DNA of 63,716 nt, the filler included, from Intoshia linei (Eukaryota; Animalia; Orthonectida): assembly GCA_001642005.1 (NCBI GenBank). It is 10 parts of 10 records of this genome, joined end to end, with 100 filler letters (N's around TTAATTAATTAA, not from the genome) between each part and the next. Parts side by side here need not be neighbours in the genome. Positions count along the whole stretch, not along the records: positions 19,539 to 36,621 come from LWCA01000814.1; 9 more parts are not named here. One strand, written 5' to 3'. The position numbers and the translations under genes were made by a program. Positions 19,539-36,528 of this stretch are shown one piece after another (the first letter of the stretch is position 1; the number at the start of each line of letters is the position of its first letter). Below the pieces are notes generated by a model, which saw only the letters and a list, made by a program, of their open reading frames with translations, searched no databases and was not told the DNA's origin.

Positions 19539-19697
19539 TAAAAATATAATATAATATATTTATAGTATTTCTATTTGACTATTCTAATTAGTTATTTTTG
19601 TATTATATATAAATTTTGCAGATCTGTCTAAGGGTGCATGCAGTTAATTAAAATTATAATAATACAATTATTATTTTTGATTTGCTACAATGTATAG

Positions 19698-20260
19698 CAG
19701 TCGTGTCAAACTTGCGATCCGCGGGCGCATGCAGCCCATTTCAAATTTAAGTGCGCCCGTCACGACTTCGTACTATGTATGTATAATATACATAAATATA
19801 TACTATATTATTAATACAAATAATATATTAATATATGCTGGAATATTTATATTATTAAATATTCCCAAATTAATTGTGTATCATCATTATTAGACCTAAA
19901 CTGCGAGAAGATCACATTTACATCAACGATATAATAAAAATAATGCTTATTAATTAGAGATAATTAACACTAACTTCAAAATTTGAAAAATTGCGTGCAA
20001 GTCATATCAAATATTAAATTTTAGTTTTATCAATCCAACGGTAATTTTAAAAAATCAATGCTTCACCACAGATACAGAACCATGCAAAAAAATATATAAT
20101 TTATTATCACATATTATTATCGAATTATCACAAAATAATTAATAATTAAATCATTGTGTAATACACAATGATCTCGATTCATATTATAATGGTTTCCAAA
20201 GATTATGCTCGAAAAATTTTTATGATGCGGCCTGCCGCGTATTTGAGTTTGACATGACTG
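19698..20260. mobile_element. hAT MITE
   Basis: TIR CAGTCGTGTCAAACT...AGTTTGACATGACTG; TSD ATGTATAG/ATGTATAA. Confidence 0.8.
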
Positions 20261-20326
20261 ATGTATAATATACATTTACCATTTACATTTACATGTTAGT
20301 AATATATTTAGTTGTAATATATTTAC

Positions 20327-23300
20327 CATTAGATTTTTCGTCTTTTTTCATATTTTTAATTTGTAAACTAAATTTATTATTATAACATAGTTGTGTAACG
20401 AATAAAGGTTGAGAATCCTAGGTAAGGATTGTACAATAGTCGTAATGACACCGGTTTGCCGATTTCATATGTTTAAAATATATGAATTAACGAATATTTT
20501 ATCGATTTTCACTTACATATGAAGTTTTTTTTGGTCAAATTCGTCTTTATCTTCAATTAGCAAATTAGTTTCAGTTATATCCTGTTTATTCAACATATCC
20601 ATTTGTTTGTCCATTTCTTTATCTAAGTCCTCAAAATTCTAAAGTACTAATTCATACCTTATTATTAACAGTATTATATTATTGTTGTTAAAAATTGTAT
20701 ATTATACAATTATTATAGTACCACTACAATTTAAAAAAACATACATTCTGCGACGCAGTGATTACCGTGTATTTTTTAAAATTACAAGCATTATCATAAA
20801 TGGCACCTCAAAAAACTTTTAATCATATCAATTTAAATCTCATATCTCAATTTGAATTTTAATCTCATAAAGTGACGCCTTTATGATTAAAAAAATACTT
20901 TAGTATTTATTTTTTATTTTGTAACTACTTTTTACTATTTATTTGGTAATTAATTTTTGTATTTGTATTTTATTAAAACAAACAATTTGAAATTATAAAT
21001 AAAACGATTAAAAATCTGATACAGCTTATCCCATTTGATATAGACACAAAATTTTAACCCTAAAAATCTCGCATTCCCAATGAAAAATAACTTTTATATT
21101 TTAACTACCAATATTTTTGAAATGTTTTGATTAACATTAAAATTAATATAAAATTAATAATTTCAACCTCATAAATCAGTTTGTTTTCTTTTTTATTTTC
21201 AGCATCAGTTAATTCTTGAGCATTTGCTAAGTTATCTACAGCAATAGCCAAAAATACATTTAAAAGTGTATCTAAAAGTATCATTAAGCAATTTTTAATA
21301 TATATTTACAGTTTCCTACAATCACCAATACAACAAAATATAAACTATATATTGTGCCACCGCTTTCGATACCACCCTGTGATCGGACTCCATTATACAT
21401 AATTTCATTCCAATCTTCCAATCCTATTATCTTAAAAATGACTTTGCAATTTTATATTAAATTAATACTTGAAAAACGGTCAATAAGGAAACTATGAACG
21501 TGTCAAAATTTGCAGCCGGTTTACCTTCTGGGAAATTCCAACTATATTAATAATATCAATGTATTTTGAATATACAAACCTGCCGCCAAAAAGTTGCATT
21601 CCCAATAATGCAAATATTAACATACACAAAAATAACAGAAACAGTAAACTAATAATTGACCGCATACTGTTCAATAGTGAAATAACTAGATTGCGTAGAG
21701 AAGCCCAATATCTAAAACTTATGTATATTTGAGTGTTTAACAATTACCTTGTTATTTTAAAAACTCGAAGCAATCGTATAGCCCTAAGAACACTAATTCC
21801 GAACGAAGATTCAGTATCAAAAGAAGACCAAATTATTTCAATGACACTGCCGAATATAACCTACATACGTGAATATAATTAATGTATATACAATGTAGCA
21901 ATGATAGACGATGTAAATATTATTTTATTTCCCAAAATAGTTAATTTTATAATCTTATATGTTATTAACAATATATATAATAACAATATAATATTATTAT
22001 TAATATTGCAAACTTACGAGAATAATTAATACATTATAATCATACCGCACAGTCAAATTTATTAAATGACGACATTAGATATACGGTTGGTTTTAAGCTA
22101 TACATTTTAAGTAATACTTCAAACACAAAACAGGCCAAAAATGCGAATTCTGCATAATCTATAATTAGTTTAAATAAGGACATAAAATAAAAATACGCAA
22201 GAAATCCGATAACCATGGAGGTTGATTATAATGTTCTACGGCAATACAAATAGTATTCAAAAACACTAATATAATAACACACCAATAGAAAAATTGTGAT
22301 TTCACCAATTTCTTTATTTTTAATCTAATAATTTAATTTAATATTTTAATTTTTGATAATTAATATTTAAATTGATAATAATGTATGTTTAATAAATAAT
22401 ATGTTATATGTTTATATAATATTAGTTTATCAATGAAACATTTAGAATAAATTAAATTCCAAAGTCTCAGGATCGATAAATATTTCAAAAAAAATACACC
22501 ATCAATTTGAGAATATGAAGAGACCATACTTTATTATTATATCTTATAATTCATATCAATTATTAAACATTAATTATTGTACAATAATAAAGTCGACAAG
22601 ATACAATATAATATTTAAATATTTGCAAGTTATAATTTACCTAAATCTACGCTCTGACGTATGCAGTCTAGATTTATTTTTTTTATTTGTATCCTTATAT
22701 AATTCTAAAATGTATGACATCAAAAATGTTATATGATTATACAATTATTAATTACTACTACTTTAATAATAAATATAGCTTTTGTGTTATTTGTATTTTT
22801 CATAAATACATTAAAACTATTTGAAAGATTTAGAGTTGATAACACATAGATACTCTAAAGCAGTAGTTCCTAACCTGCACACCGCGGTAAATTGGTGCGA
22901 CATGAGTAGTATTAAGGTGCATCGCAAATATTTTATTTTCTAAAAAAGTTTTTTTTTATTCTATTGTTTTATTTAAAAATTTTTATAAATTAGTTCCAAA
23001 CTTTTATATTGACAATTCTCTGATTAAAATTTTTTAATCTATTATTGATTATAATTATATTCGTGTATATATATTCAAATATTATAATATATTTACTAAT
23101 ATATTTAAATAATAATTTATAATTATAATTTTAATTATATAATAATTTAGTATATTGAATAATATGGTGAACTCCAAAAATATTGATAAATTTCATCCTA
23201 TATCAAAAGTTCTTTACTATATTTAAATTAACCAAATAAAAGTATTTTTGTATTAGTAGAGAAAGTTTTTTACAAATAACCTATAATAATTACACAAATA

Positions 23301-26300
23301 ACATGAAGCTTAATTTTTAGTAACTTTATTAACTTTTAGAAAACATTTTTATATACACTGCAGTGTAGTGATTGTACCCCTGCATAAAAGAGTTTTAAAA
23401 ATTAGAATTTTGATAGCCTGTTAGGTCACGAAGGTCTAGGCTACGGAAGTTCGGTCTGCTTAGGTCTTATAAATAATATTTATCAGATATCTATATTCAA
23501 TATTTTATACCTGTCACTATCGATTAACTGTCACTAATCCAGCGGTTCCCAAATTGGGTACTGGGATATTTAAGGTGCGCCCTGATGTTAAAAATGATAA
23601 AAATCACTGCTCTCAAGTTTTATTATTTTATTAATTTTAGTATTATAAAATTCCAAAGGGATATTACTAGTATCGTCATAGTCGTCGGAAGCGTCATTGC
23701 TTTCTTTGAGTCTTAGGAATTTCATTTTTTTTGTAGTTTTCCTTCTTCGACCTAATATATATAAGTATATACATTATTATTTAAACCTTCAATTATTTTT
23801 TTTTTTTCTGCTAAAGTGGTTCTATCTTCATTTAAAATTACTTCTTCTAAAATTAGTATGTAAAAGAGATATCAAATGATCACATTATTTGAATTATTAT
23901 TTACCTGCTCTGCAAATCCACTCTAAATATCCATTTAATTCTATTTCCATTTGTTTCTGTTTTCTCATTTTATTATATGAACGTTTGTGTTCTACTCTCT
24001 CACGCTCTTTTTGAAATTCTCTATATTTTTTTCAGATATAGTATAATTATTGGATAATTAACTACCCGCTAAGTACACCAAGCACTAGATTTAACAAGAA
24101 GAAAGATCCCAATATGATTATAATTATGTAGTAAAGAAAATTAGCAGAGGTTCCAACCACATTGTTCGTCTATAATGGGACATTAATTACAAAAAATAAA
24201 ATTTTACATTATATAAAATTGTAGTCCATCCTTCCATTGTTATACATTGAAAAACGGTTAACATAGAATAGAATATATTGTCAAAACTTGTTATTCCATA
24301 ATTAGGTCCTCTCCAGTATGGTGTACATTGAGAATTAATTGGGCATATATAACTTCCAGATGCATGTGTACTGGAACATGGAATAAGTATTTCTTTGTTA
24401 TTATAATTAAAATTTCCTGTAATGATATAAATGTATATTTTATAATTTGTATTGTACCCGTTTCAGTGAATCTACAAGCTTTATGGAAAATTCCAGAATA
24501 AAATTCTAATCCAATTATCGCAAAAATCAATATAGCAAATATTACAATAACACCAATTTGAAGTAGTGGAACCATTGCCATAATTATTGACTTTAATACC
24601 ACTTGTAAACCTTTATAATTTTGTAAAATATGTATATATGATATTTGGTAGGTATACAACACAGTAAAAACACTAACTAGGTATTCCTGAAACCAATTTA
24701 AGTGGTCGTAAAACTCGTAATGCTCGAATTATCCGTAAGTTTATCAAACCATTACCATTCGGCAAGAAATAAGTTAAAAATCTGTAATAGGGTATATTAT
24801 AATAATAAAAATTTTATAATGATAATAAATAAATATTCATAAATATTTTTACACTTAAATTTCGTAGATAAATTCGCATATATAAAAATAAAAATATTTG
24901 AATAAAAGCTATCAAAATTTAAAGTAAATTCATATTAATCATTAATTATCAATAAATTTGACAAACATGCAGGATAGTTATAAATTTTGCATTTAAATGC
25001 AAATATTACTTTCAAACCCAGTTACTATACGTAATGGACGCAAAACTCGAATAGCCCTTAAAGCAGCTTGATCAAAATTTGTCATAGACAATGACAATAA
25101 TCTATATAATATTTTAATATATAAATTTGAATTAATTTTAAAATGTCATTTGCACAAAAATATATTTTAATATACTATAATATTATAATATTTATATTTA
25201 AAGATTTTATATAACTTTAATTAATGTATAATAATGAAATTAATGAATACATAATTAATAATTGTCTTATACCAAAAACAATAATACAAAATGTATATGA
25301 TTCATTTATTGCGAGTCAATGAATTTAATCTAATTTTATTTGAACGATAGAATTGATGTTATTATTCACAATGGTTGAACTATTATGGTTCACCATTTAA
25401 CCATTTTCTGGTATGAACACCTTGAAATGTTTTGCACACAATATTAGCTGATTTAAATATTTTTTCATGAATAAATAATATTTTTGTATGAAAATAAGTA
25501 GAAAAATGTAATTAATATTATTACAGGTTATTAGTAATATTTGAACGTACACTGGAAATAATGTTTTGCAGGTACATACAAAGTAAATATGAAGCAATAG
25601 ATACGAGTCGTATCATATGAAAAAAATAAGAATTAAATTTAATTAATTTATCTTCCGTTGATGTTTTATTTGCTTAATTTTGGTATGCGATAAATAATTA
25701 TTTATAGATAATCATCTAATTACCCAGTTAAAACGACAATGAAGTCCATTATATTCCAAAAATTTCTTAAATAACCGTTTGGTGTTATTAGAAAACCATA
25801 TGCAATAACTTTCAGAATAAATTCTACGCAAAATATACTCAAAAAATATATTTCCGTATCCTCCTAAAAATAATATTATAATAATGTAATAACCCCAACT
25901 ATTTTATAAATTATAATATTTTATAATATAATATAAATTAAAAATTTCAAATAATTTAACCGTTTAATCAACATACTGCAGGCATAATTACGTTTTGTAA
26001 AATTTTGTTTCATAAAAATATGAAGACTGAAGTGTATTTTAAATTTAGTAAAAAAGTTTTGCTTATTTCAAAACTACAGCATATTAAATAAATAAAAAAT
26101 ACCAATTTTGTGGATAGCACAGTTTTATCACCATTAGGTAAATGCATCTCCATTCCTAACACAAAACAGTTTGCTATAATTGTTAGCAAAATCATATATT
26201 CGAAGGGATTGAATCATTAAGGATATAATATAATAATGTTTTAGCTTTTAAACAGGCATGGCATAAACCAGTAACTTAAAAAATTTGAGCACGCATAGTA

Positions 26301-27373
26301 AAAATGATAATAATGCATATCAATGGGTACCGAAATTTTACTATTCCGTTTTTTAACCTTAATTTAAATACAACTACTAAGTAATATATTTTCCCATGCC
26401 TATTCTAAACCCGTATATTTCGTCGACTCTAATATATAAAAAATTTATACATAAATGAGTCACGTATATATTGGTATTAGATTATAAAAATCTACTAAAA
26501 TAAAAGGATATTTCCATTCTACCAGCAGTTTCGCATATTTTCTGATTGGATTTTTTTCCGAAAACAAAAAAAAAGATCGATTTGAAGTTAGGAAAGAGTA
26601 AAATTGAAAATTGAATCCAATTTTACTAAAGAACGAACTGGCAAATGCTTGGTGATTTTTGTCAAATGTATTAGTATTTTTGCTTGAGAAAGACAAAAGT
26701 CTATTTCTGTAATCAATTGTACTCGACGATTTGTGCTTCCTGTAAATGAATATAATTATATAAGGTTATTAGGTTTTAAACATTTATGAATCATCTATAT
26801 AAATTTCTTTTATGTGTGTAGTACCTCCGTATTTAAATTATAGTTACACAGTATAATCAGTAAGTAACACAAATTAATTTGAATAATCGATATTTTTGTT
26901 CACTTAATTTTACTTTTATTCAACTATCACCAAGTATAGTTTATCTGGATGATTTTTAATCGATATAACCAAGTAAATGCAAGGAATATTTTAATCAATT
27001 CTTTTAAACAAATGACTACAAAATGTCACCTAATTAAATGTAAACATTTTTTTTCAATAAAGCTAAACAATGAACCAAATTGCCAATGTAATGATAACAA
27101 TAAAAACATTAACCTCACAAATTGGGTCAACTGAACAAATAAAATAATTAATATTTACGTGTTTCCATATGTAATTGGTCTTTTTTTATTTTTTCTTTGA
27201 TATTGTAAATTCAGACAGTCTTTTATGCCTTTTATATTTACCGCATCACGTCTTTGTTCCAAAAAATCATTGGAGGTAACACCTCTGCGCGATTCCCAAT
27301 TCGTATTTGTTATCGACTCATTAGCTTTTTTCACATCCCTAGTACACCTTTGATGACGTCGAGGGACAATCAT
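20327..27373 (-). CDS. Voltage-gated calcium channel alpha-1 subunit, Cav2 (cacophony/CACNA1A/B/E-like), N-terminus through the start of the II-III loop; 3' half absent
   Basis: Spliced exons give [69 protein letters not shown], pore [61 protein letters not shown] and [24 protein letters not shown] (Cav2-typical). Confidence 0.95.
22861..23609. mobile_element. hAT MITE (composite) in a Cav2 intron
   Basis: CAGTAGTTCCTAACCT...AAAATCACTG; TSD CTCTAAAG/CTCTCAAG. Confidence 0.55.
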
Positions 27374-27760
27374 TTCATTTTTAATCTAATATTCGGAAAA
27401 TGAATCAAATTAACTTGGATTGTACCAATACAAAAAATAAATCAATGCAAGTCCAATCATACTAATTAAATGGTATTCGTTTATAGACATGTACAGTGAT
27501 TATTTCTGTATATCTATTATATATCTGTATATATATTAGTGATCTATACAATACACTTCATATTTAATGATTAATTTTAATTACTAGTCTGTATACAGAA
27601 TTTCAACTACTAAATCTCTAAATCACTTGTAGATTCTAAATTAAATCAATTTATTATTCGTTACCTTCATTTGATTAAATATTACAGGTGAATAAAATTA
27701 TTCACAAACATAAAAATCAATAATAAGTATTTAATAAAAATTTACAATGTAGATAATTAG

Positions 27761-30022
27761 TCAATTCGATACTTTCGAATTTTGGCTTAAATAACCAGAT
27801 ATATTCTCGTAAAGCACCATAGTTATGCAGCACGCCGGCGTTACTCTCAAGATGCACATATACAATCCAGAATAAAAATCACGTATACCACCGACACTAA
27901 AAAAGTAGAATATTAGATCCCATCAAAAGTACTATATATAAATAAATTTATTAATTTTCAACAGCTGAAACAATATTATTTAAATAGGAATAGATGTTTT
28001 CCTCATAAACTGAGAAACATTTTTACTCACATTTTCGTAAACAAACATAACAATAATGATACTAGGTAGCATATGTATGAGAGTCGGAAATATTCCTTTA
28101 TAATAACCTCTCATTCCTTCATTACTAAATTATGTGTATATCGATAAACCAAATCGAAGTAAATTATTACCGTATAATATACATGACCACATCGTAAACC
28201 CCATTGTAACGAGAATGTTGATCCTGCAATCGCGATCTTATAACTTGATAAGGGTAAGTTGTAACAACAGCTATCATTTTGGATAAGCTTGCAAAGGCCA
28301 AATATTCCAAAAACGTCTTAAATAATAATATTACATGATATGGGTAGTTTATAAGCAGTAGTTGGAAAATATAGAAATGCTAACAAATTTTAAACTTTAC
28401 CACACGCGGTGTTAATACGTCGACCAAGATAAACGTCTCAATTCAGAGTTATTATATCAGATCACGGGTGTATCCATTATGAATATGTATATTTACGTTT
28501 TTATATATAAATATATATATATATATAACATCAGATTCAAATAAAATAAAAAAGAGTGGTACCATATTTTCATCTTGATAAATAAAATAAATATTCACAC
28601 ATTTTTATTTATATACTAGTGCTATACATAGTGTATCTTCCAAATTCAGTATTTAATATTAAATTGAGATCTTTCTATGAAAGATAATAAAATTAATTTT
28701 CATCAGAACATATGCCATAAAAAAATTATGCAAAGTTATAAGATTAGTCAGAAAAAATTAATTTCAATTCAATTATTTGATTGCAGGTATATTTCCCGGT
28801 CCTGTATAAGCCGTGTGCTAAAATATCAAAGTTTAATTAGACAGTTAAAGTTAAAGATTAGAATCAATTAAGTTTTTCAAAAATACATTTGAATTTGATA
28901 ATTAAAAATATACATCGTACGATCATCAAATTAAAATTGGAACGAAAATCGTAAAGCTTAATATTAGACATTTGTCAGAATTCCTTTTTACTATAGTCGA
29001 TAACGGATAAATTAAGTTGGTCTCTTTATACCAGGGGTGGGCAAACCACTGCCCACGTAATATTTTTTTCTCCGCTCAAAATTTTATATTGTGTTAAATA
29101 TCGATTAATAAATAATTATAATCTATAAATCTATTTTCGTTTATAAGTTTATTATTTTCCCACCCCTGCTTTATCAAATACAATATTTACGTATTTTCTT
29201 TTATCGGTGTATTCATATTGTCTAAATTTGCAATATCTCTTTTTGGTATCTTCGTAAACTACAAATTGTATAGCGCCATGAGATACTCCAAACAAACCAG
29301 GAGTAAATCCCTACATTTATGTTAAAATTACATCATAAAATTATTGAATCTTAAATGTAAGTTTACTTTGTAAAGAGAAGTAAACCCTTCTTGGCGAATC
29401 ATGGTTTTCATACAATGAAAAATTCCATTATAGGTCTGTGTACCCATATTTTCATACTGTAAAATCAACCGAGTTTTTACGACCCATATTGGATTTGCCA
29501 ATAAAAGCGTGAATACGCCTGAAAATAATGTATATACATTTAAATATACTACCGGCCTGGCTAGCATAACTCAAATGCTGTTTCCAATTTAATTCTACAA
29601 CGTCTTTAGTCTTTAGTGTATGCTGCTTAAGAGAACCGTACCTAAATATTTCATTAAAATTCTGAATAAAATCAATCATAAATTACACTAAAAAATAAAT
29701 TCCCCACGATGTTGATGATCCCATCACATTTGGCAACAATCCTCTGTACAAACTACTCACACCTCCACTTCTTACTATCTTTGAAATAGCGTCAAATATT
29801 CCGGTATATTTGGGTCGATTAATATTGCTTTTACCATTTTCAACTAAATAATGTAGATACCTTTTATCAAGTATACCTTGAAATCTCACTTTAAGCAGGT
29901 CGAGTGGGTGCAAAATCATAGTTGATACGCCACCTAAAATTAACTGTATTGTTTAAAGATAATTTACCTCCTATCATCCCACCAAGTAAGGATTCATATC
30001 GTATGTTACTGTAAAAGCTCAT
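27761..30022 (-). CDS. SLC25A32: Mitochondrial folate/FAD carrier with two alternative last exons
   Basis: [68 protein letters not shown] and [15 protein letters not shown]: three carrier repeats matching SLC25A32. Confidence 0.92.
29032..29168. mobile_element. Small hAT MITE
   Basis: TIR CAGGGGTGGGCAAA...TTTTCCCACCCCTG; TSD CTTTATAC/CTTTATCA. Confidence 0.75.
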
Positions 30023-31823: not shown

Positions 31824-32711
31824 TTAAAACATTTTTTTTTTAATTTTCAGTGTCTTGTAGGATGTTATAACATGTTGAGTATCATAATCTTGTGAAATTT
31901 GGTTATTTAGTCGCATTGGTTTTGAACTACAATTTTTCCAATTTATACTTTGTTTTAAAAATTCTTTACGAAGCGTTGTACATCTTGTCGGTTTTATGGT
32001 ATTGAATATGGATTTTTGACTTTTATTAGAATATAATTTTCTAGGTTTCGGATTTTTATCATAAATATGCTTACATATTACTGGCTGCCATGAATTTTGA
32101 TTAATGTAGACATCTGATTTATCTTCATGGTCAGTTTTTTTTGAAGATCTTTGACTTATATTCTTGCACCAAGTTACAAATGATAATTTATTTTGTTCTC
32201 TTTTGCTTTGATTTTCTAGCTCTAATTTTATTTTTTGTTCCTGTAAATTCAATTCAATCTGTTTCCGTTCCATGTTTTTCTTTCTTAGCCATGTCTCGTA
32301 ACATTTTTTTGTTTCAAGTTCTCTCTTCTTTTCAATTTCTTTTGTTTCTTGATTCGACTGTATTTTATCTTTTATTTTTTTTCTCAATACCATATTATCT
32401 ATTTCTGCTTTTTTATGTATCCATTCATGTACCTTTTTCTGATTTAAATTTACTTTATTAATTTTTTCTATTGTTTCACGAGCAGATTTTATTTTATTTT
32501 CAAAAAAATATGTTTGTTCTTCTATTTGTTTTTTCTTAATTTCAATTTCTTTTTTAATAGTCCATTTTTGCCAAGCATCCACTACCGAATTTCCTTTTAA
32601 ATTTTGTTCGTTGACATTTAAAACTGACAATGCATCTGTATTTTCAATTTTTGTGTGTATTTTTGTGGTATAATTTATGGGAATATGTTGATCGGCACAG
32701 TTATCATTCAT
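31824..32711 (-). CDS. CCDC34: Coiled-coil protein, CCDC34-like
   Basis: 295-aa ORF with periodic Trp motifs (AWQKW, VHEWIHKK, YETWLRKK, FVTWC) in a charged coiled coil, and YINQNSWQPV resembling the CCDC34 C-terminal FYNPIPWKPI. Confidence 0.65.
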   Translation of the reverse strand: MNDNCADQHIPINYTTKIHTKIENTDALSVLNVNEQNLKGNSVVDAWQKWTIKKEIEIKKKQIEEQTYFFENKIKSARETIEKINKVNLNQKKVHEWIHKKAEIDNMVLRKKIKDKIQSNQETKEIEKKRELETKKCYETWLRKKNMERKQIELNLQEQKIKLELENQSKREQNKLSFVTWCKNISQRSSKKTDHEDKSDVYINQNSWQPVICKHIYDKNPKPRKLYSNKSQKSIFNTIKPTRCTTLRKEFLKQSINWKNCSSKPMRLNNQISQDYDTQHVITSYKTLKIKKKMF

Positions 32712-35471: not shown

Positions 35472-36528
35472 CACACTGTGTCAAATTTTTAGGAAAATTA
35501 TATAAAGCTATGTAATACACTCAAGATCTAGCCAAAATATTTATTTTTTTTTGTAATTCGGTGACTTGTAACAAATGCTAATATTATTCATTAAAAAATA
35601 AATAGTTAATATGCAAAAAAAACTTTTTATCTACTTATTATCGTTTTTTTGCATAACTTAGTGTGTCAAATTATTAGGCAAATTTATAATGGGACAAAAA
35701 AACGATTTAAAAATGGACGAAAAAAGCCAAATAATGGCTTTATTATCAAAAGGGAAGACAACTCTTCAAATTTCCAAATGTTTAAAGCGCGATAATCGCA
35801 CTATAAAGAAATGAATTAATGATCTATCTAAAATAACCGTAAAATCGAATAATCGGATAAATTCGAAGACCGAAATTTTTAGAAATAAGTGCATATTTAT
35901 GCATGACAATGCATTTTCACATGCATCGTTATATACTAGCACATTTATTTCAGAAAATTGCATTAGCGGAGAAAAATTGATGAATTGGCCCCAACAGCCC
36001 CGATTAGTAGAAACACAATAGAAAATTACTGGACCATGATAAAAATGTAATATATTAAAATTACTTTAATAATTATTCATATTAATCATTTAGAAAATTA
36101 TATTTGGTTGGGACTCATTATAACTTTATTGATGAACTTTGGAATGCTATTAAAGAAGTGTTTAAATCAATTATACCAGAACGTGTCAAGAGATTGACCG
36201 ATTCTGTCAATGCTAGGCTCATTAAGGTGTTACAAGTTCATGGCAACTATATTAAATATTAAATATTAGAACTAATTTTTAATGATAAATTCCACTTCAT
36301 TCACCTATGTTCATTACATTTGCCTAATATTTTGACACACTTGTATTAACTAATATTTATATATATTCAATTATTTCAATTTTAATTGTATTAGATTTTT
36401 TTTGTTTGCATTTTAAATATTGTCGTAAACTATTGTGCACACTCACTAAAAAAATTTAAGAATTTAGTCCAGTCTTTGGAACGAATTTTTTAATTTTTTA
36501 GATTTGCCTAATAAATTAACACAGTGTG
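35472..36528 (+). mobile_element. Tc1-like (TRT/DD37E) transposon, internally deleted copy with both ends
   Basis: TA-flanked TIRs CACACTGTGTCAAATT..AGG; inner repeats at 35661 and 36320. Retains the transposase start and C-terminus (MHDNA..SHAS, IENYW, DELWNAI). Matches 56507-57966. Confidence 0.88.

What the first reader, a model, noticed from the sequence alone, without database searches (positions are those of the whole stretch)
24678..25101. Mutually exclusive voltage-sensor (IS3-IS4) exons in Cav2 that differ by one gating charge
Seen: two tandem homologous exons with canonical AG/GT ends. 25101-25010 (92 nt) encodes [30 protein letters not shown]; 24781-24678 (104 nt) encodes [34 protein letters not shown]. 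Both start in phase 2 and end in phase 1, so either fits, but including both or neither shifts the frame. The 92-nt exon lacks the outermost S4 arginine (4 vs 5 basic residues), has K5 changed to R, and has a different S4-S5 linker (TGFES vs SGIPS). Known: Drosophila cacophony has mutually exclusive IS4 exons that alter activation voltage. Inference: a splice switch retunes voltage dependence, yielding two channel types from one gene in a reduced genome.
Basis: partly seen in the sequence, partly recalled or inferred. Interest (0 to 1): 0.82.

Follow-up and report, generated by a model that had tools for sequence, protein, structure and literature searches.

The report
Ancient alternative Cav2 voltage-sensor exons
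The calcium-channel gene of the tiny parasite Intoshia linei carries two interchangeable versions of one voltage-sensor exon, and the same pair occurs in sea urchins, feather stars, snails and other invertebrates, so it is an old conserved splice switch and not a quirk of a reduced genome.

Summary
On the minus strand, two tandem homologous exons encode the end of IS3 through IS4 of a Cav2-type channel. They are 25101-25010 (92 nt) and 24781-24678 (104 nt). Both have AG/GT ends and the same phase. Including both or neither produces an early stop.

The piece is an Intoshia linei contig. Its GenBank model (OAF66841.1) uses only the 92-nt exon.

The 92-nt exon belongs to a conserved class that lacks the outermost arginine (R1) and has an altered S4-S5 junction. 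That class is an alternative isoform of the same Cav2 gene in RefSeq models of Lytechinus, Antedon and Pomacea. It is the only form seen in parasitic flatworm models. In five metagenome contigs it lies upstream of the canonical exon, in the same order as here.

Synonymous sites between the two Intoshia exons are saturated, yet both keep the S4 pattern and exon-like GC. Both are therefore under selection.

The Drosophila IS4A/IS4B pair is analogous but appears to be a different pair.

No transcript data could be reached, so use of both exons in Intoshia, and any effect on gating, remain inferences. Verdict: a real, probably ancient mutually exclusive pair and a new member of a known kind.

The parts
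25724..25863 (-). Constitutive exon (140 nt) encoding IS2-IS3, ending ..[14 protein letters not shown] with two bases of the Gly codon; donor GT at 25723-25722
   Evidence: sequence; Pfam Ion_trans, E = 8.7e-10; present in the GenBank protein P0121
25102..25723 (-). Intron of 622 nt upstream of exon A, about 11 times the species' median intron length
   Evidence: length, GC 0.19; median intron 57 bp in I. linei (PMC6543705)
25010..25101 (-). Exon A (92 nt): the R1-less IS3-IS4 variant, [30 protein letters not shown]; four basic residues; TGFES junction
   Evidence: GC 0.35; used in GenBank model OAF66841.1; 23-24/30 identical to the alternative exon in loci L014-L019; groups with the R1-less class
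24782..25009 (-). Intron of 228 nt between the two alternative exons. It is long enough to be spliced, so steric hindrance is not what keeps the exons apart
   Evidence: GC 0.16; only AT-rich, low-complexity inverted repeats
24678..24781 (-). Exon B (104 nt): the canonical Cav2 IS3-IS4 variant, [34 protein letters not shown]; R1-R4 plus K5; SGIPS junction. Not in the GenBank model
   Evidence: best match Cav2.2/2.1/2.3 IS4; GC 0.33; groups with canonical exons
24611..24677 (-). Intron of 67 nt
24458..24610 (-). Constitutive exon (153 nt) encoding the S4-S5 linker and IS5, (S)[51 protein letters not shown]; carries the Cav2 hallmark LQVVLKSI
   Evidence: Pfam Ion_trans; 589 Cav2-type relatives
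24208..24416 (-). Constitutive exon (209 nt) encoding the domain I pore loop (..[13 protein letters not shown])
   Evidence: query of the big search
19539..27373 (-). Partial Cav2 alpha-1 gene: N-terminus, domain I, I-II linker with the beta-subunit binding motif ([19 protein letters not shown]), domain II and the start of the II-III loop. Cut off by the end of the contig at 19539
   Evidence: full-length tree places it among spiralian Cav2, away from Cav1

Best explanation
The window is a contig of the orthonectid Intoshia linei. It carries the 5' half of the animal's Cav2 (presynaptic, non-L-type) calcium-channel alpha-1 gene.

The segment from the end of IS3 to the start of the S4-S5 linker is encoded twice, by two tandem exons that are spliced in a mutually exclusive way. 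Exon B gives the canonical Cav2 voltage sensor, with R1-R4 plus K5 and the SGIPS hinge. Exon A gives a variant that lacks the outermost charge (R1 is Ala), has Arg at K5, has a four-residue shorter S3-S4 loop, and has a TGFES hinge.

Exclusivity is enforced at least by reading frame. Neither 92 nor 104 is a multiple of three, so including both or neither produces an early stop. Such products would be truncated or, if nonsense-mediated decay acts, removed.

The pair is not an Intoshia invention. It is most likely the local copy of an old bilaterian alternative-exon pair, R1-less exon first and canonical exon second. That pair survives in echinoderms, molluscs and unidentified spiralian-like animals, was reduced to the R1-less form in parasitic flatworm models, and was split between gene duplicates in Biomphalaria.

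Shown here: the anatomy, the frames, homology to IS4, the identity of the organism and gene, selection on both exons, and the existence and tandem order of the same two classes elsewhere.

Inferred: that Intoshia makes both mRNAs, and that the two channels differ in the voltage range or kinetics of activation, or in coupling through the S4-S5 hinge. These differences might serve different cell types or life stages.
For: Anatomy and frames.

Homology to IS4 of solved Cav channels.

Gene is Cav2:
- LQVVLKSI and hundreds of Cav2 relatives.
- Beta-subunit binding motif.
- Full-length tree places Intoshia inside a spiralian Cav2 clade (SH-aLRT 99), with Cav1 on a separate branch at 100.

Organism: the window's own protein is OAF66841.1 of Intoshia linei, on a contig of 17083 nt, which equals the length of the piece.

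Selection on both exons:
- Synonymous difference 0.88 (saturated) against non-synonymous 0.46.
- GC is 0.35 and 0.33 in the exons against 0.16-0.22 in the flanking introns.
- Exon A is 23-24/30 identical to alternative exons in other genomes.
- Exon B keeps every invariant of the canonical S4 and hinge.

The same two classes are true alternative isoforms elsewhere:
- Lytechinus X7 against 13 canonical isoforms, Antedon X5 against 14, and Pomacea X8 against 14.
- Lytechinus X7 and X1 differ only at residues 159-186.

Same tandem order (IS3 exon, 92-nt R1-less exon with cag|G..GAAA|gtaagt, canonical exon, IS5 exon) in loci L014 and L019. L016, L017 and L018 each carry the R1-less exon followed by the canonical exon on one strand; L017 also holds the IS3 exon and L018 the IS5 exon.

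The exon tree splits the R1-less class from the canonical class with support 91-93/89-90, and in 90-96% of bootstrap trees. The gene tree follows the species tree.

Introns flanking exon A are 622 and 228 nt. The genome median is 57 nt, and neighbouring introns in this gene are 38-67 nt.
Against: - No RNA evidence from Intoshia. The GenBank model, a prediction, uses exon A only.
- The test of a single old origin is not decisive. An AU test of 'Intoshia A and B are each other's closest relatives' gave p = 0.066, 0.035 and 0.104 on 34 columns, with a log-likelihood difference of about 16.
- Exon A departs from its class at two positions: Ala where others have Pro at the R1 site, and Arg where others have Lys at K5.
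- No conserved RNA structure or regulatory element that would steer the exon choice was found.
- The direction and size of any gating change cannot be read from sequence. The one functional study of Cav2 IS4 exons (Drosophila) concerns a different substitution.
Confidence: 0.85

Rival explanations
1. Only one of the two exons is used in Intoshia. The other is an unused relic of an old duplication that happens still to be intact.
For: No transcript data. The GenBank model includes only exon A. An open frame of 30 codons in this AT-rich DNA has roughly a 5% chance by itself (my estimate from base composition).
Against: Synonymous sites between the exons are saturated while the S4 pattern is kept. 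Both exons keep exon-like GC in very AT-rich introns. Both keep AG/GT ends and the correct phase. Each matches its own conserved class at 60-80% identity despite the fast-evolving orthonectid lineage. A genome with a 57-nt median intron has kept 942 nt between the IS3 exon and exon B.
Confidence: 0.08
2. The pair arose by a tandem duplication within the orthonectid lineage. Exon A resembles the R1-less exons of other phyla by convergence, so the pair is functional but not ancient.
For: The AU test does not firmly reject Intoshia A plus B as a clade: p = 0.066, 0.035 and 0.104 on 34 columns. Both Intoshia exons sit on long branches.
Against: - Exon A shares the 30-residue length, the FDQ.AL motif, loss of R1 and the exact TGFES junction with flatworm and metagenome exons. 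It is 23-24/30 identical to L014/L015/L018/L019 but only 11/19 identical to exon B over the S4 core (my count).
- The constrained tree is about 16 log-likelihood units worse.
- The class split is recovered in 90-96% of bootstrap trees.
- The exon order and the 92-nt exon with the same boundaries recur in other genomes.
Confidence: 0.1
3. The two exons are not alternatives. Both are included, or exon A belongs to another transcript.
For: None found.
Against: Joint inclusion gives a stop after two codons of exon B. No other gene or RNA family is detected in the interval.
Confidence: 0.01

Closest known systems
Drosophila cacophony (Cav2) mutually exclusive exons IS4A/IS4B
   Same: Same gene family and same segment (IS4 of domain I). 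Two tandem exons, one of which must be chosen. The upstream exon is the variant and the downstream exon is canonical. The exons differ by one positive charge. Experiments show they change activation voltage and synaptic localisation (PMC11828482; PMC12370356).
   Different: The fly exons are 99 nt each and start and end in a different phase. Both keep R1. The extra charge of IS4A is Gly-to-Arg in the S4-S5 junction (..LVSRIPS). IS4A groups with canonical exons in the exon tree. It is conserved across arthropods (Colias, Meganyctiphanes, Nymphon), so it looks like a separate arthropod pair.
RefSeq isoforms of the single Cav2 gene of Lytechinus variegatus (X7), Antedon mediterranea (X5) and Pomacea canaliculata (X8)
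   Same: Same two exon classes: a 30-residue R1-less exon ([FL][DN]QPA[ILV]R..RVLRPLK.V..) against a longer canonical exon with R1 and SGIPS. The isoforms differ only in that block.
   Different: These are predicted models. The library searches, whose terms did not name these isoforms specifically, turned up no paper that discusses them. They have Pro, not Ala, at the R1 site and Lys, not Arg, at K5. The Lytechinus junction reads SNIPS.
Vertebrate sodium-channel exons 5a/5b (5N/5A) of the SCN-alpha genes
   Same: Homologous position in a four-domain channel (domain I S3-S4). Both are 92 nt, so joint inclusion or skipping shifts the frame. The duplication is old and predates the gene duplications (PMC12772994).
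   Different: A different channel family. The two exons differ by one or a few residues in the S3-S4 loop, not by a gating charge (from my own knowledge). Nonsense-mediated decay was found not to be the main cause of exclusivity there, and intronic RNA pairing contributes. No such pairing was found here.
Parasitic flatworm Cav2 (Schistosoma, Trichobilharzia, Clonorchis, Echinococcus and others), and the second Biomphalaria Cav2 gene
   Same: IS4 is of the R1-less class with the identical TGFES junction ([31 protein letters not shown]).
   Different: In these models the R1-less form is the only one seen. In Biomphalaria it sits in a recent duplicate gene while the sister gene carries the canonical form. 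Whether flatworm genomes also hold an unannotated canonical exon was not tested.

Membership tests
Cav2 (non-L-type, high-voltage-activated) calcium channel alpha-1 subunit | Four-domain voltage-gated channel fold (Ion_trans domains with S4 arginine repeats) | tested here: met
   Pfam PF00520 on six exon pieces. Domains I and II lie within the window. Domains III and IV lie beyond the contig end.
Cav2 (non-L-type, high-voltage-activated) calcium channel alpha-1 subunit | Selectivity-filter glutamates in the pore loops, and a beta-subunit binding motif in the I-II linker | tested here: met
   Domain I ..TMEGW.. and domain II ..LEDWN... The motif [19 protein letters not shown] fits Q..E..L.GY..WI...E; the consensus is from my own knowledge.
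Cav2 (non-L-type, high-voltage-activated) calcium channel alpha-1 subunit | Groups with Cav2 and not Cav1 or Cav3 | tested here: met
   LQVVLKSI as in all Cav2 hits, against LQVVLNSI in Cav1. The full-length tree puts it in the spiralian Cav2 clade (99), with Cav1 separate (100). The Intoshia branch is long and the tree was a quick search.
Mutually exclusive exon pair | Tandem homologous exons with the same phase and intact splice sites, where including both or neither breaks the frame | tested here: met
Mutually exclusive exon pair | Mature mRNAs contain exactly one of the two, and both kinds exist | not testable with these tools
The GenBank model uses exon A only.
R1-less IS4 alternative-exon class of invertebrate Cav2 | 30-residue exon; non-basic residue at the R1 site within a [FL][DN]Q[PA]A[ILV]R motif; altered G-I-P-S junction; lies upstream of a canonical exon | tested here: met
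   Exon A is 30 aa, with FDQAALR and TGFES, and lies upstream of exon B. It is 23-24/30 identical to L014-L019. The class forms one side of a branch with 91-93/89-90 support. Same order in L014 and L016-L019.
R1-less IS4 alternative-exon class of invertebrate Cav2 | Common descent of exon A with that class, as opposed to an Intoshia-specific duplication | tested here: inconclusive
   AU test p = 0.066, 0.035 and 0.104, with a log-likelihood difference of about 16 on 34 columns. Common descent is favoured but not proven.
Orthologue of Drosophila IS4A/IS4B | The variant exon carries the IS4A signature ([19 protein letters not shown][IL]P: R1 kept, extra Arg in the junction) | tested here: not met
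   Exon A lacks R1 and has TGFES. IS4A falls with canonical exons in the exon trees.

The most novel reading that the evidence does not exclude
The ancestor of protostomes and deuterostomes already made two Cav2 channels from one gene by choosing between a five-charge IS4 exon and an R1-less exon with a different S4-S5 hinge. This switch has been kept for over half a billion years, even in an animal whose nervous system has about ten cells. It was lost in vertebrates, which instead have three Cav2 genes. It was replaced by a different pair in arthropods, resolved into separate genes in some snails, and apparently fixed to the R1-less form in parasitic flatworms. Under this reading the two exons would define two ancestral functional types of presynaptic calcium channel.
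Probability: 0.6. Interest if true: 0.7.

Novelty: new member of a known kind. Interest (0 to 1): 0.5.

Why it matters
Mutually exclusive splicing of a voltage-sensor exon is a known way to get two channels from one gene. For Cav2, the papers I could search describe it only in Drosophila. They call it absent from vertebrates and say nothing about other animals.

Four points follow.
- A second kind of IS4 pair, canonical against R1-less, is widespread and probably older than the protostome-deuterostome split.
- An extremely reduced genome has kept it, which argues that both channel forms are needed even in a minimal nervous and muscular system.
- It provides natural, selected variants for asking what the outermost charge and the S4-S5 hinge of sensor I do in Cav2 gating.
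- It flags unannotated exons and faulty gene models in public records.

The functional consequence is still unmeasured.

Tried and rejected
- The search of earlier findings was not open.
As a result I could not fetch the genomic loci of named relatives, nor any transcript contigs of Intoshia.

Searches that did not help
- A word search with the IS5 exon piece found only short Cav2 fragments with canonical IS4.
- It found no orthonectid relative.
- Inverted and direct repeat scans of 24600-25730 gave only AT-rich low-complexity pairs plus the shared S4 core, so there is no evidence for docking and selector RNA pairing.
- Rfam and tRNA scans of the piece found nothing.
- Paper searches for Intoshia calcium channels, for IS4 alternative exons outside Drosophila, and for the JAAU* contig prefixes found nothing.

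Ideas rejected
- The R1-less exon as the mark of an old Cav2 paralogue. The full-length tree follows the species tree, and Biomphalaria's second gene is a recent duplicate.
- Steric hindrance as the cause of exclusivity. The intron between the exons is 228 nt.
- Orthology with Drosophila IS4A.
Full report
**Observation**

- Exon A is 25101-25010 (92 nt). It follows AG at 25103-25102, precedes GT at 25009-25008, and encodes [30 protein letters not shown].
- Exon B is 24781-24678 (104 nt). It follows AG at 24783-24782, precedes GT at 24677-24676, and encodes [34 protein letters not shown].
- The upstream exon ends ..[11 protein letters not shown] at 25724 with two bases of a Gly codon. The downstream exon starts at 24610 and supplies the last two bases of a Ser codon before LQVVLKSII.

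Either exon alone keeps the frame. A plus B stops after two codons of B. Skipping both shifts the frame to a stop about 43 codons on (three exons were joined inside a script for this frame check only).

Exon A has four basic residues and exon B five. In A the R1 position is Ala, K5 is Arg, and the S4-S5 junction is TGFES instead of SGIPS.

Both peptides match IS4 of solved calcium channels. B is closest to Cav2.2, Cav2.1 and Cav2.3 (E = 1.8e-7). A matches Cav1.2 and Cav2.2 about equally (E about 4e-5). The only non-AT-rich repeat in the interval is the shared S4 core.

**Gene and organism**

Stop-free segments of the minus strand from about 27373 down to the contig end at 19539 encode the following:
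- the N-terminus and IS1 to IS6;
- an I-II linker with the beta-subunit binding motif;
- IIS1 to IIS6 and the start of the II-III loop.

Pfam calls Ion_trans on six pieces. The IS5 exon carries LQVVLKSI, which every Cav2 relative has. Cav1 proteins have LQVVLNSI.

The one large search, run with the domain I pore exon, returned a 1134-residue protein that contains the window's own exons. It is OAF66841.1, 'Mitochondrial folate transporter/carrier, partial [Intoshia linei]', on a contig of 17083 nt. That is exactly the length of this piece.

That model is a fusion of the neighbouring carrier gene (27980-30022) with the channel gene. It uses exon A and skips exon B.

A full-length tree places the Intoshia protein among spiralian Cav2 channels, with Cav1 on a separate, fully supported branch. 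This was a quick search and the Intoshia branch is long.

**Are both exons maintained?**

- Between A and B, the proportion of synonymous differences is 0.88, which is saturated. The non-synonymous proportion is 0.46, and RVLRPL is kept through different codons. The duplication is therefore old, and the protein pattern has been held by selection.
- Both exons have GC of 0.33-0.35, against 0.16-0.22 in the introns beside them.
- Exon B keeps every invariant of the canonical Cav2 S4 and hinge.
- Exon A is 60-80% identical to exons of its own class in other phyla.
- The introns beside exon A are 622 and 228 nt. The next introns in this gene are 67, 41, 38 and 45 nt. The median for the genome is 57 nt (PMC6543705).

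**The decisive comparative result**

The second-best hit of the large search, a Schistosoma japonicum Cav2, reads [40 protein letters not shown]. It has the same length, the same loss of R1 and the same TGFES as exon A.

A word search scored on that region alone ranked a set of 'R1-less' proteins at the top:
- trematodes and cestodes;
- Pinctada;
- a Biomphalaria gene;
- Pomacea isoform X8;
- Lytechinus isoform X7.

The crinoid Antedon isoform X5, another R1-less protein, had already come up in the large search. It was ranked in the second region search and named.

Listing cluster members showed that this form is an alternative isoform of the same gene:
- In Lytechinus, one isoform is R1-less and 13 are canonical.
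- In Antedon the split is one against 14.
- In Pomacea it is one against 14.

Lytechinus X7 and X1 are identical except at residues 159-186. The Pomacea and Antedon pairs that were compared differ in the equivalent IS3-IS4 block and in one or two separate short blocks elsewhere.

The full-length tree follows the species tree. The Biomphalaria R1-less gene is a recent duplicate, and Pinctada sits beside Crassostrea. The R1-less exon is therefore not the mark of an old paralogue.

**Genomic arrangement elsewhere**

A degenerate DNA pattern for QPA[ILV]R[AS][IL]RVLRP[LI]K found 20 contigs in the metagenome collection.

Five of them carry both classes on one strand. They are L014, L016, L018 and L019 (JAAU* records) and L017 (whose canonical exon matches Mya).
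- L014 and L019 hold all four elements: the IS3 exon, then a 92-nt R1-less exon bounded cag|G...GAAA|gtaagt, then a canonical exon of 34-35 residues, then the IS5 exon.
- L016, L017 and L018 each hold the R1-less exon followed by the canonical exon. L017 also has the IS3 exon upstream, where its R1-less exon is 95 nt. L018 also has the IS5 exon downstream.

This is the Intoshia order and, for the JAAU* contigs, the same exon boundaries. Their alternative exon, [30 protein letters not shown], is 23-24/30 identical to Intoshia exon A.

In another group of contigs (for example L002) only the R1-less exon lies upstream of IS5, as in flatworm models.

**Exon phylogeny**

Trees of the 30-43-residue exon peptides put all R1-less exons, with Intoshia exon A, on one side of a branch. 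All canonical exons, with Intoshia exon B, fall on the other side. Support is 91-93/89-90, and the split appears in 90-96% of bootstrap trees.

The alignment has only 34 usable columns. AU tests of the rival 'Intoshia A and B form a clade' gave p = 0.066, 0.035 and 0.104, with a log-likelihood loss of about 16. A single old origin is favoured but not formally proven.

A near-identical motif appears in a sea urchin (LDQPAIR) and a pearl oyster (FDQPAIR), where canonical exons have FDLRTLR. This makes convergence unlikely in my judgement.

**Relation to Drosophila**

The fly pair is real and functional. Each exon is 99 nt. They differ at 13 residues, and IS4A has one more positive charge. IS4B is needed for sustained high-voltage current and active-zone localisation (PMC11828482; PMC12370356).

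The IS4A sequence (..[23 protein letters not shown]) keeps R1. It gains its charge by Gly to Arg in the hinge.

The same IS4A type lies in tandem with a canonical exon in mis-joined models of a butterfly, a krill and a sea spider, so it is pan-arthropod. It groups with canonical exons in the exon trees. The Intoshia pair therefore works like the fly pair but is probably a different and older pair.

The closest structural analogue outside Cav channels is sodium-channel exon 5a/5b. It is also domain I S3-S4, also 92 nt, and also old (PMC12772994).

The Aplysia Cav2 survey lists five splice sites, none of them at IS4 (PMC5818475). I found no paper on this exon class.

**Mechanism**

Shown: the frame rule makes any mRNA with both or neither exon non-productive.

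Not shown: what steers the choice between the exons. No intronic pairing stands out.

At the protein level, exon A does three things:
- it removes the outermost S4 charge;
- it shortens the S3-S4 loop by four residues;
- it replaces the Pro of the G-I-P-S hinge with Glu.

From general knowledge of voltage sensors, each change can shift the voltage range or speed of sensor movement, or its coupling to the pore. The direction cannot be predicted from sequence. The fly result concerns another substitution.

I think the most likely reading is two channel types with different activation properties or partners, used in different cells or stages. I put the architecture and use of both exons at about 0.85, and a measurable gating difference at about 0.6.

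**Limits**

- There is no transcript evidence for Intoshia.
- The search of earlier findings was not open.
- The word-based searches sample candidates, so the taxonomic spread of the class is a lower bound. No named annelid was recovered.

Noticed in passing
window 26209-26511 (minus strand): The intron between the N-terminal exon (..KYAKLLVEW) and the IS1 exon ([15 protein letters not shown]..) looks like a U12-type (minor spliceosome) intron. The donor is tgg aa|ATATCCTTT at 26511. A branch-site match TCCTTAAT lies at 26223-26216. The only in-frame 3' end is AA|T at 26209/26208. There is no AG or AC in reach. Minor introns are known to be conserved in voltage-gated channel genes (from my own knowledge). 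This suggests that Intoshia keeps a minor spliceosome.
   Followed up: partly
window 19539-30022; protein P0121 (OAF66841.1): The GenBank model is a chimera of the mitochondrial folate carrier gene (27980-30022) and the Cav2 gene. It also mis-splices IS1, skipping ..SKIGF...KYAKLLVEW and [13 protein letters not shown], apparently because the predictor could not handle the AT-start intron. The channel is therefore filed under the wrong name.
   Followed up: partly
window 35649-36262 (+) and 31824-32711 (-): There are fragments of a Tc1/mariner-like transposase in two frames, and an intronless 295-residue Lys/Glu-rich ORF of unknown function.
   Followed up: no
protein P0001 (ENA contig, 141 aa): One ORF call from another, arthropod-like species holds two IS5-like segments in tandem. 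The first is Cav1-like (..LNAILMAMIPLLHIALLVIF..) and the second Cav2-like. This may be a further alternative-exon pair at IS5.
   Followed up: no
proteins P0536 (Colias), P0550 (Meganyctiphanes), P0375 (Nymphon), P0528 (Camponotus): Database models read through both arthropod IS4 exons in tandem: the IS4A type [19 protein letters not shown][IL]P, then the canonical exon. This shows that the Drosophila pair is pan-arthropod and that these models are mis-joined.
   Followed up: partly
proteins P0382 and P0458 (Haliotis asinina isoforms): Abalone Cav2 isoforms carry two different canonical-type IS3-IS4 segments (LLTYFSSMGSTTFNLRTL.. and FITLLHTSTSSSSFDLRTL..), both with R1. This gene may therefore have more than two alternatives. 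Intoshia exon B is closest to the first of them.
   Followed up: no
proteins P0289 and P0391 (Biomphalaria); tree: Biomphalaria has two recently duplicated Cav2 genes, one fixed for the R1-less exon and one for the canonical exon. This may be a case of alternative exons being partitioned between gene copies.
   Followed up: partly
loci L001-L013 and L020 (JGI metagenome contigs): A second group of unidentified animal contigs carries an R1-less exon ([31 protein letters not shown]). In L002, no canonical exon lies between it and IS5, which suggests lineages where the R1-less form is the only one.
   Followed up: partly
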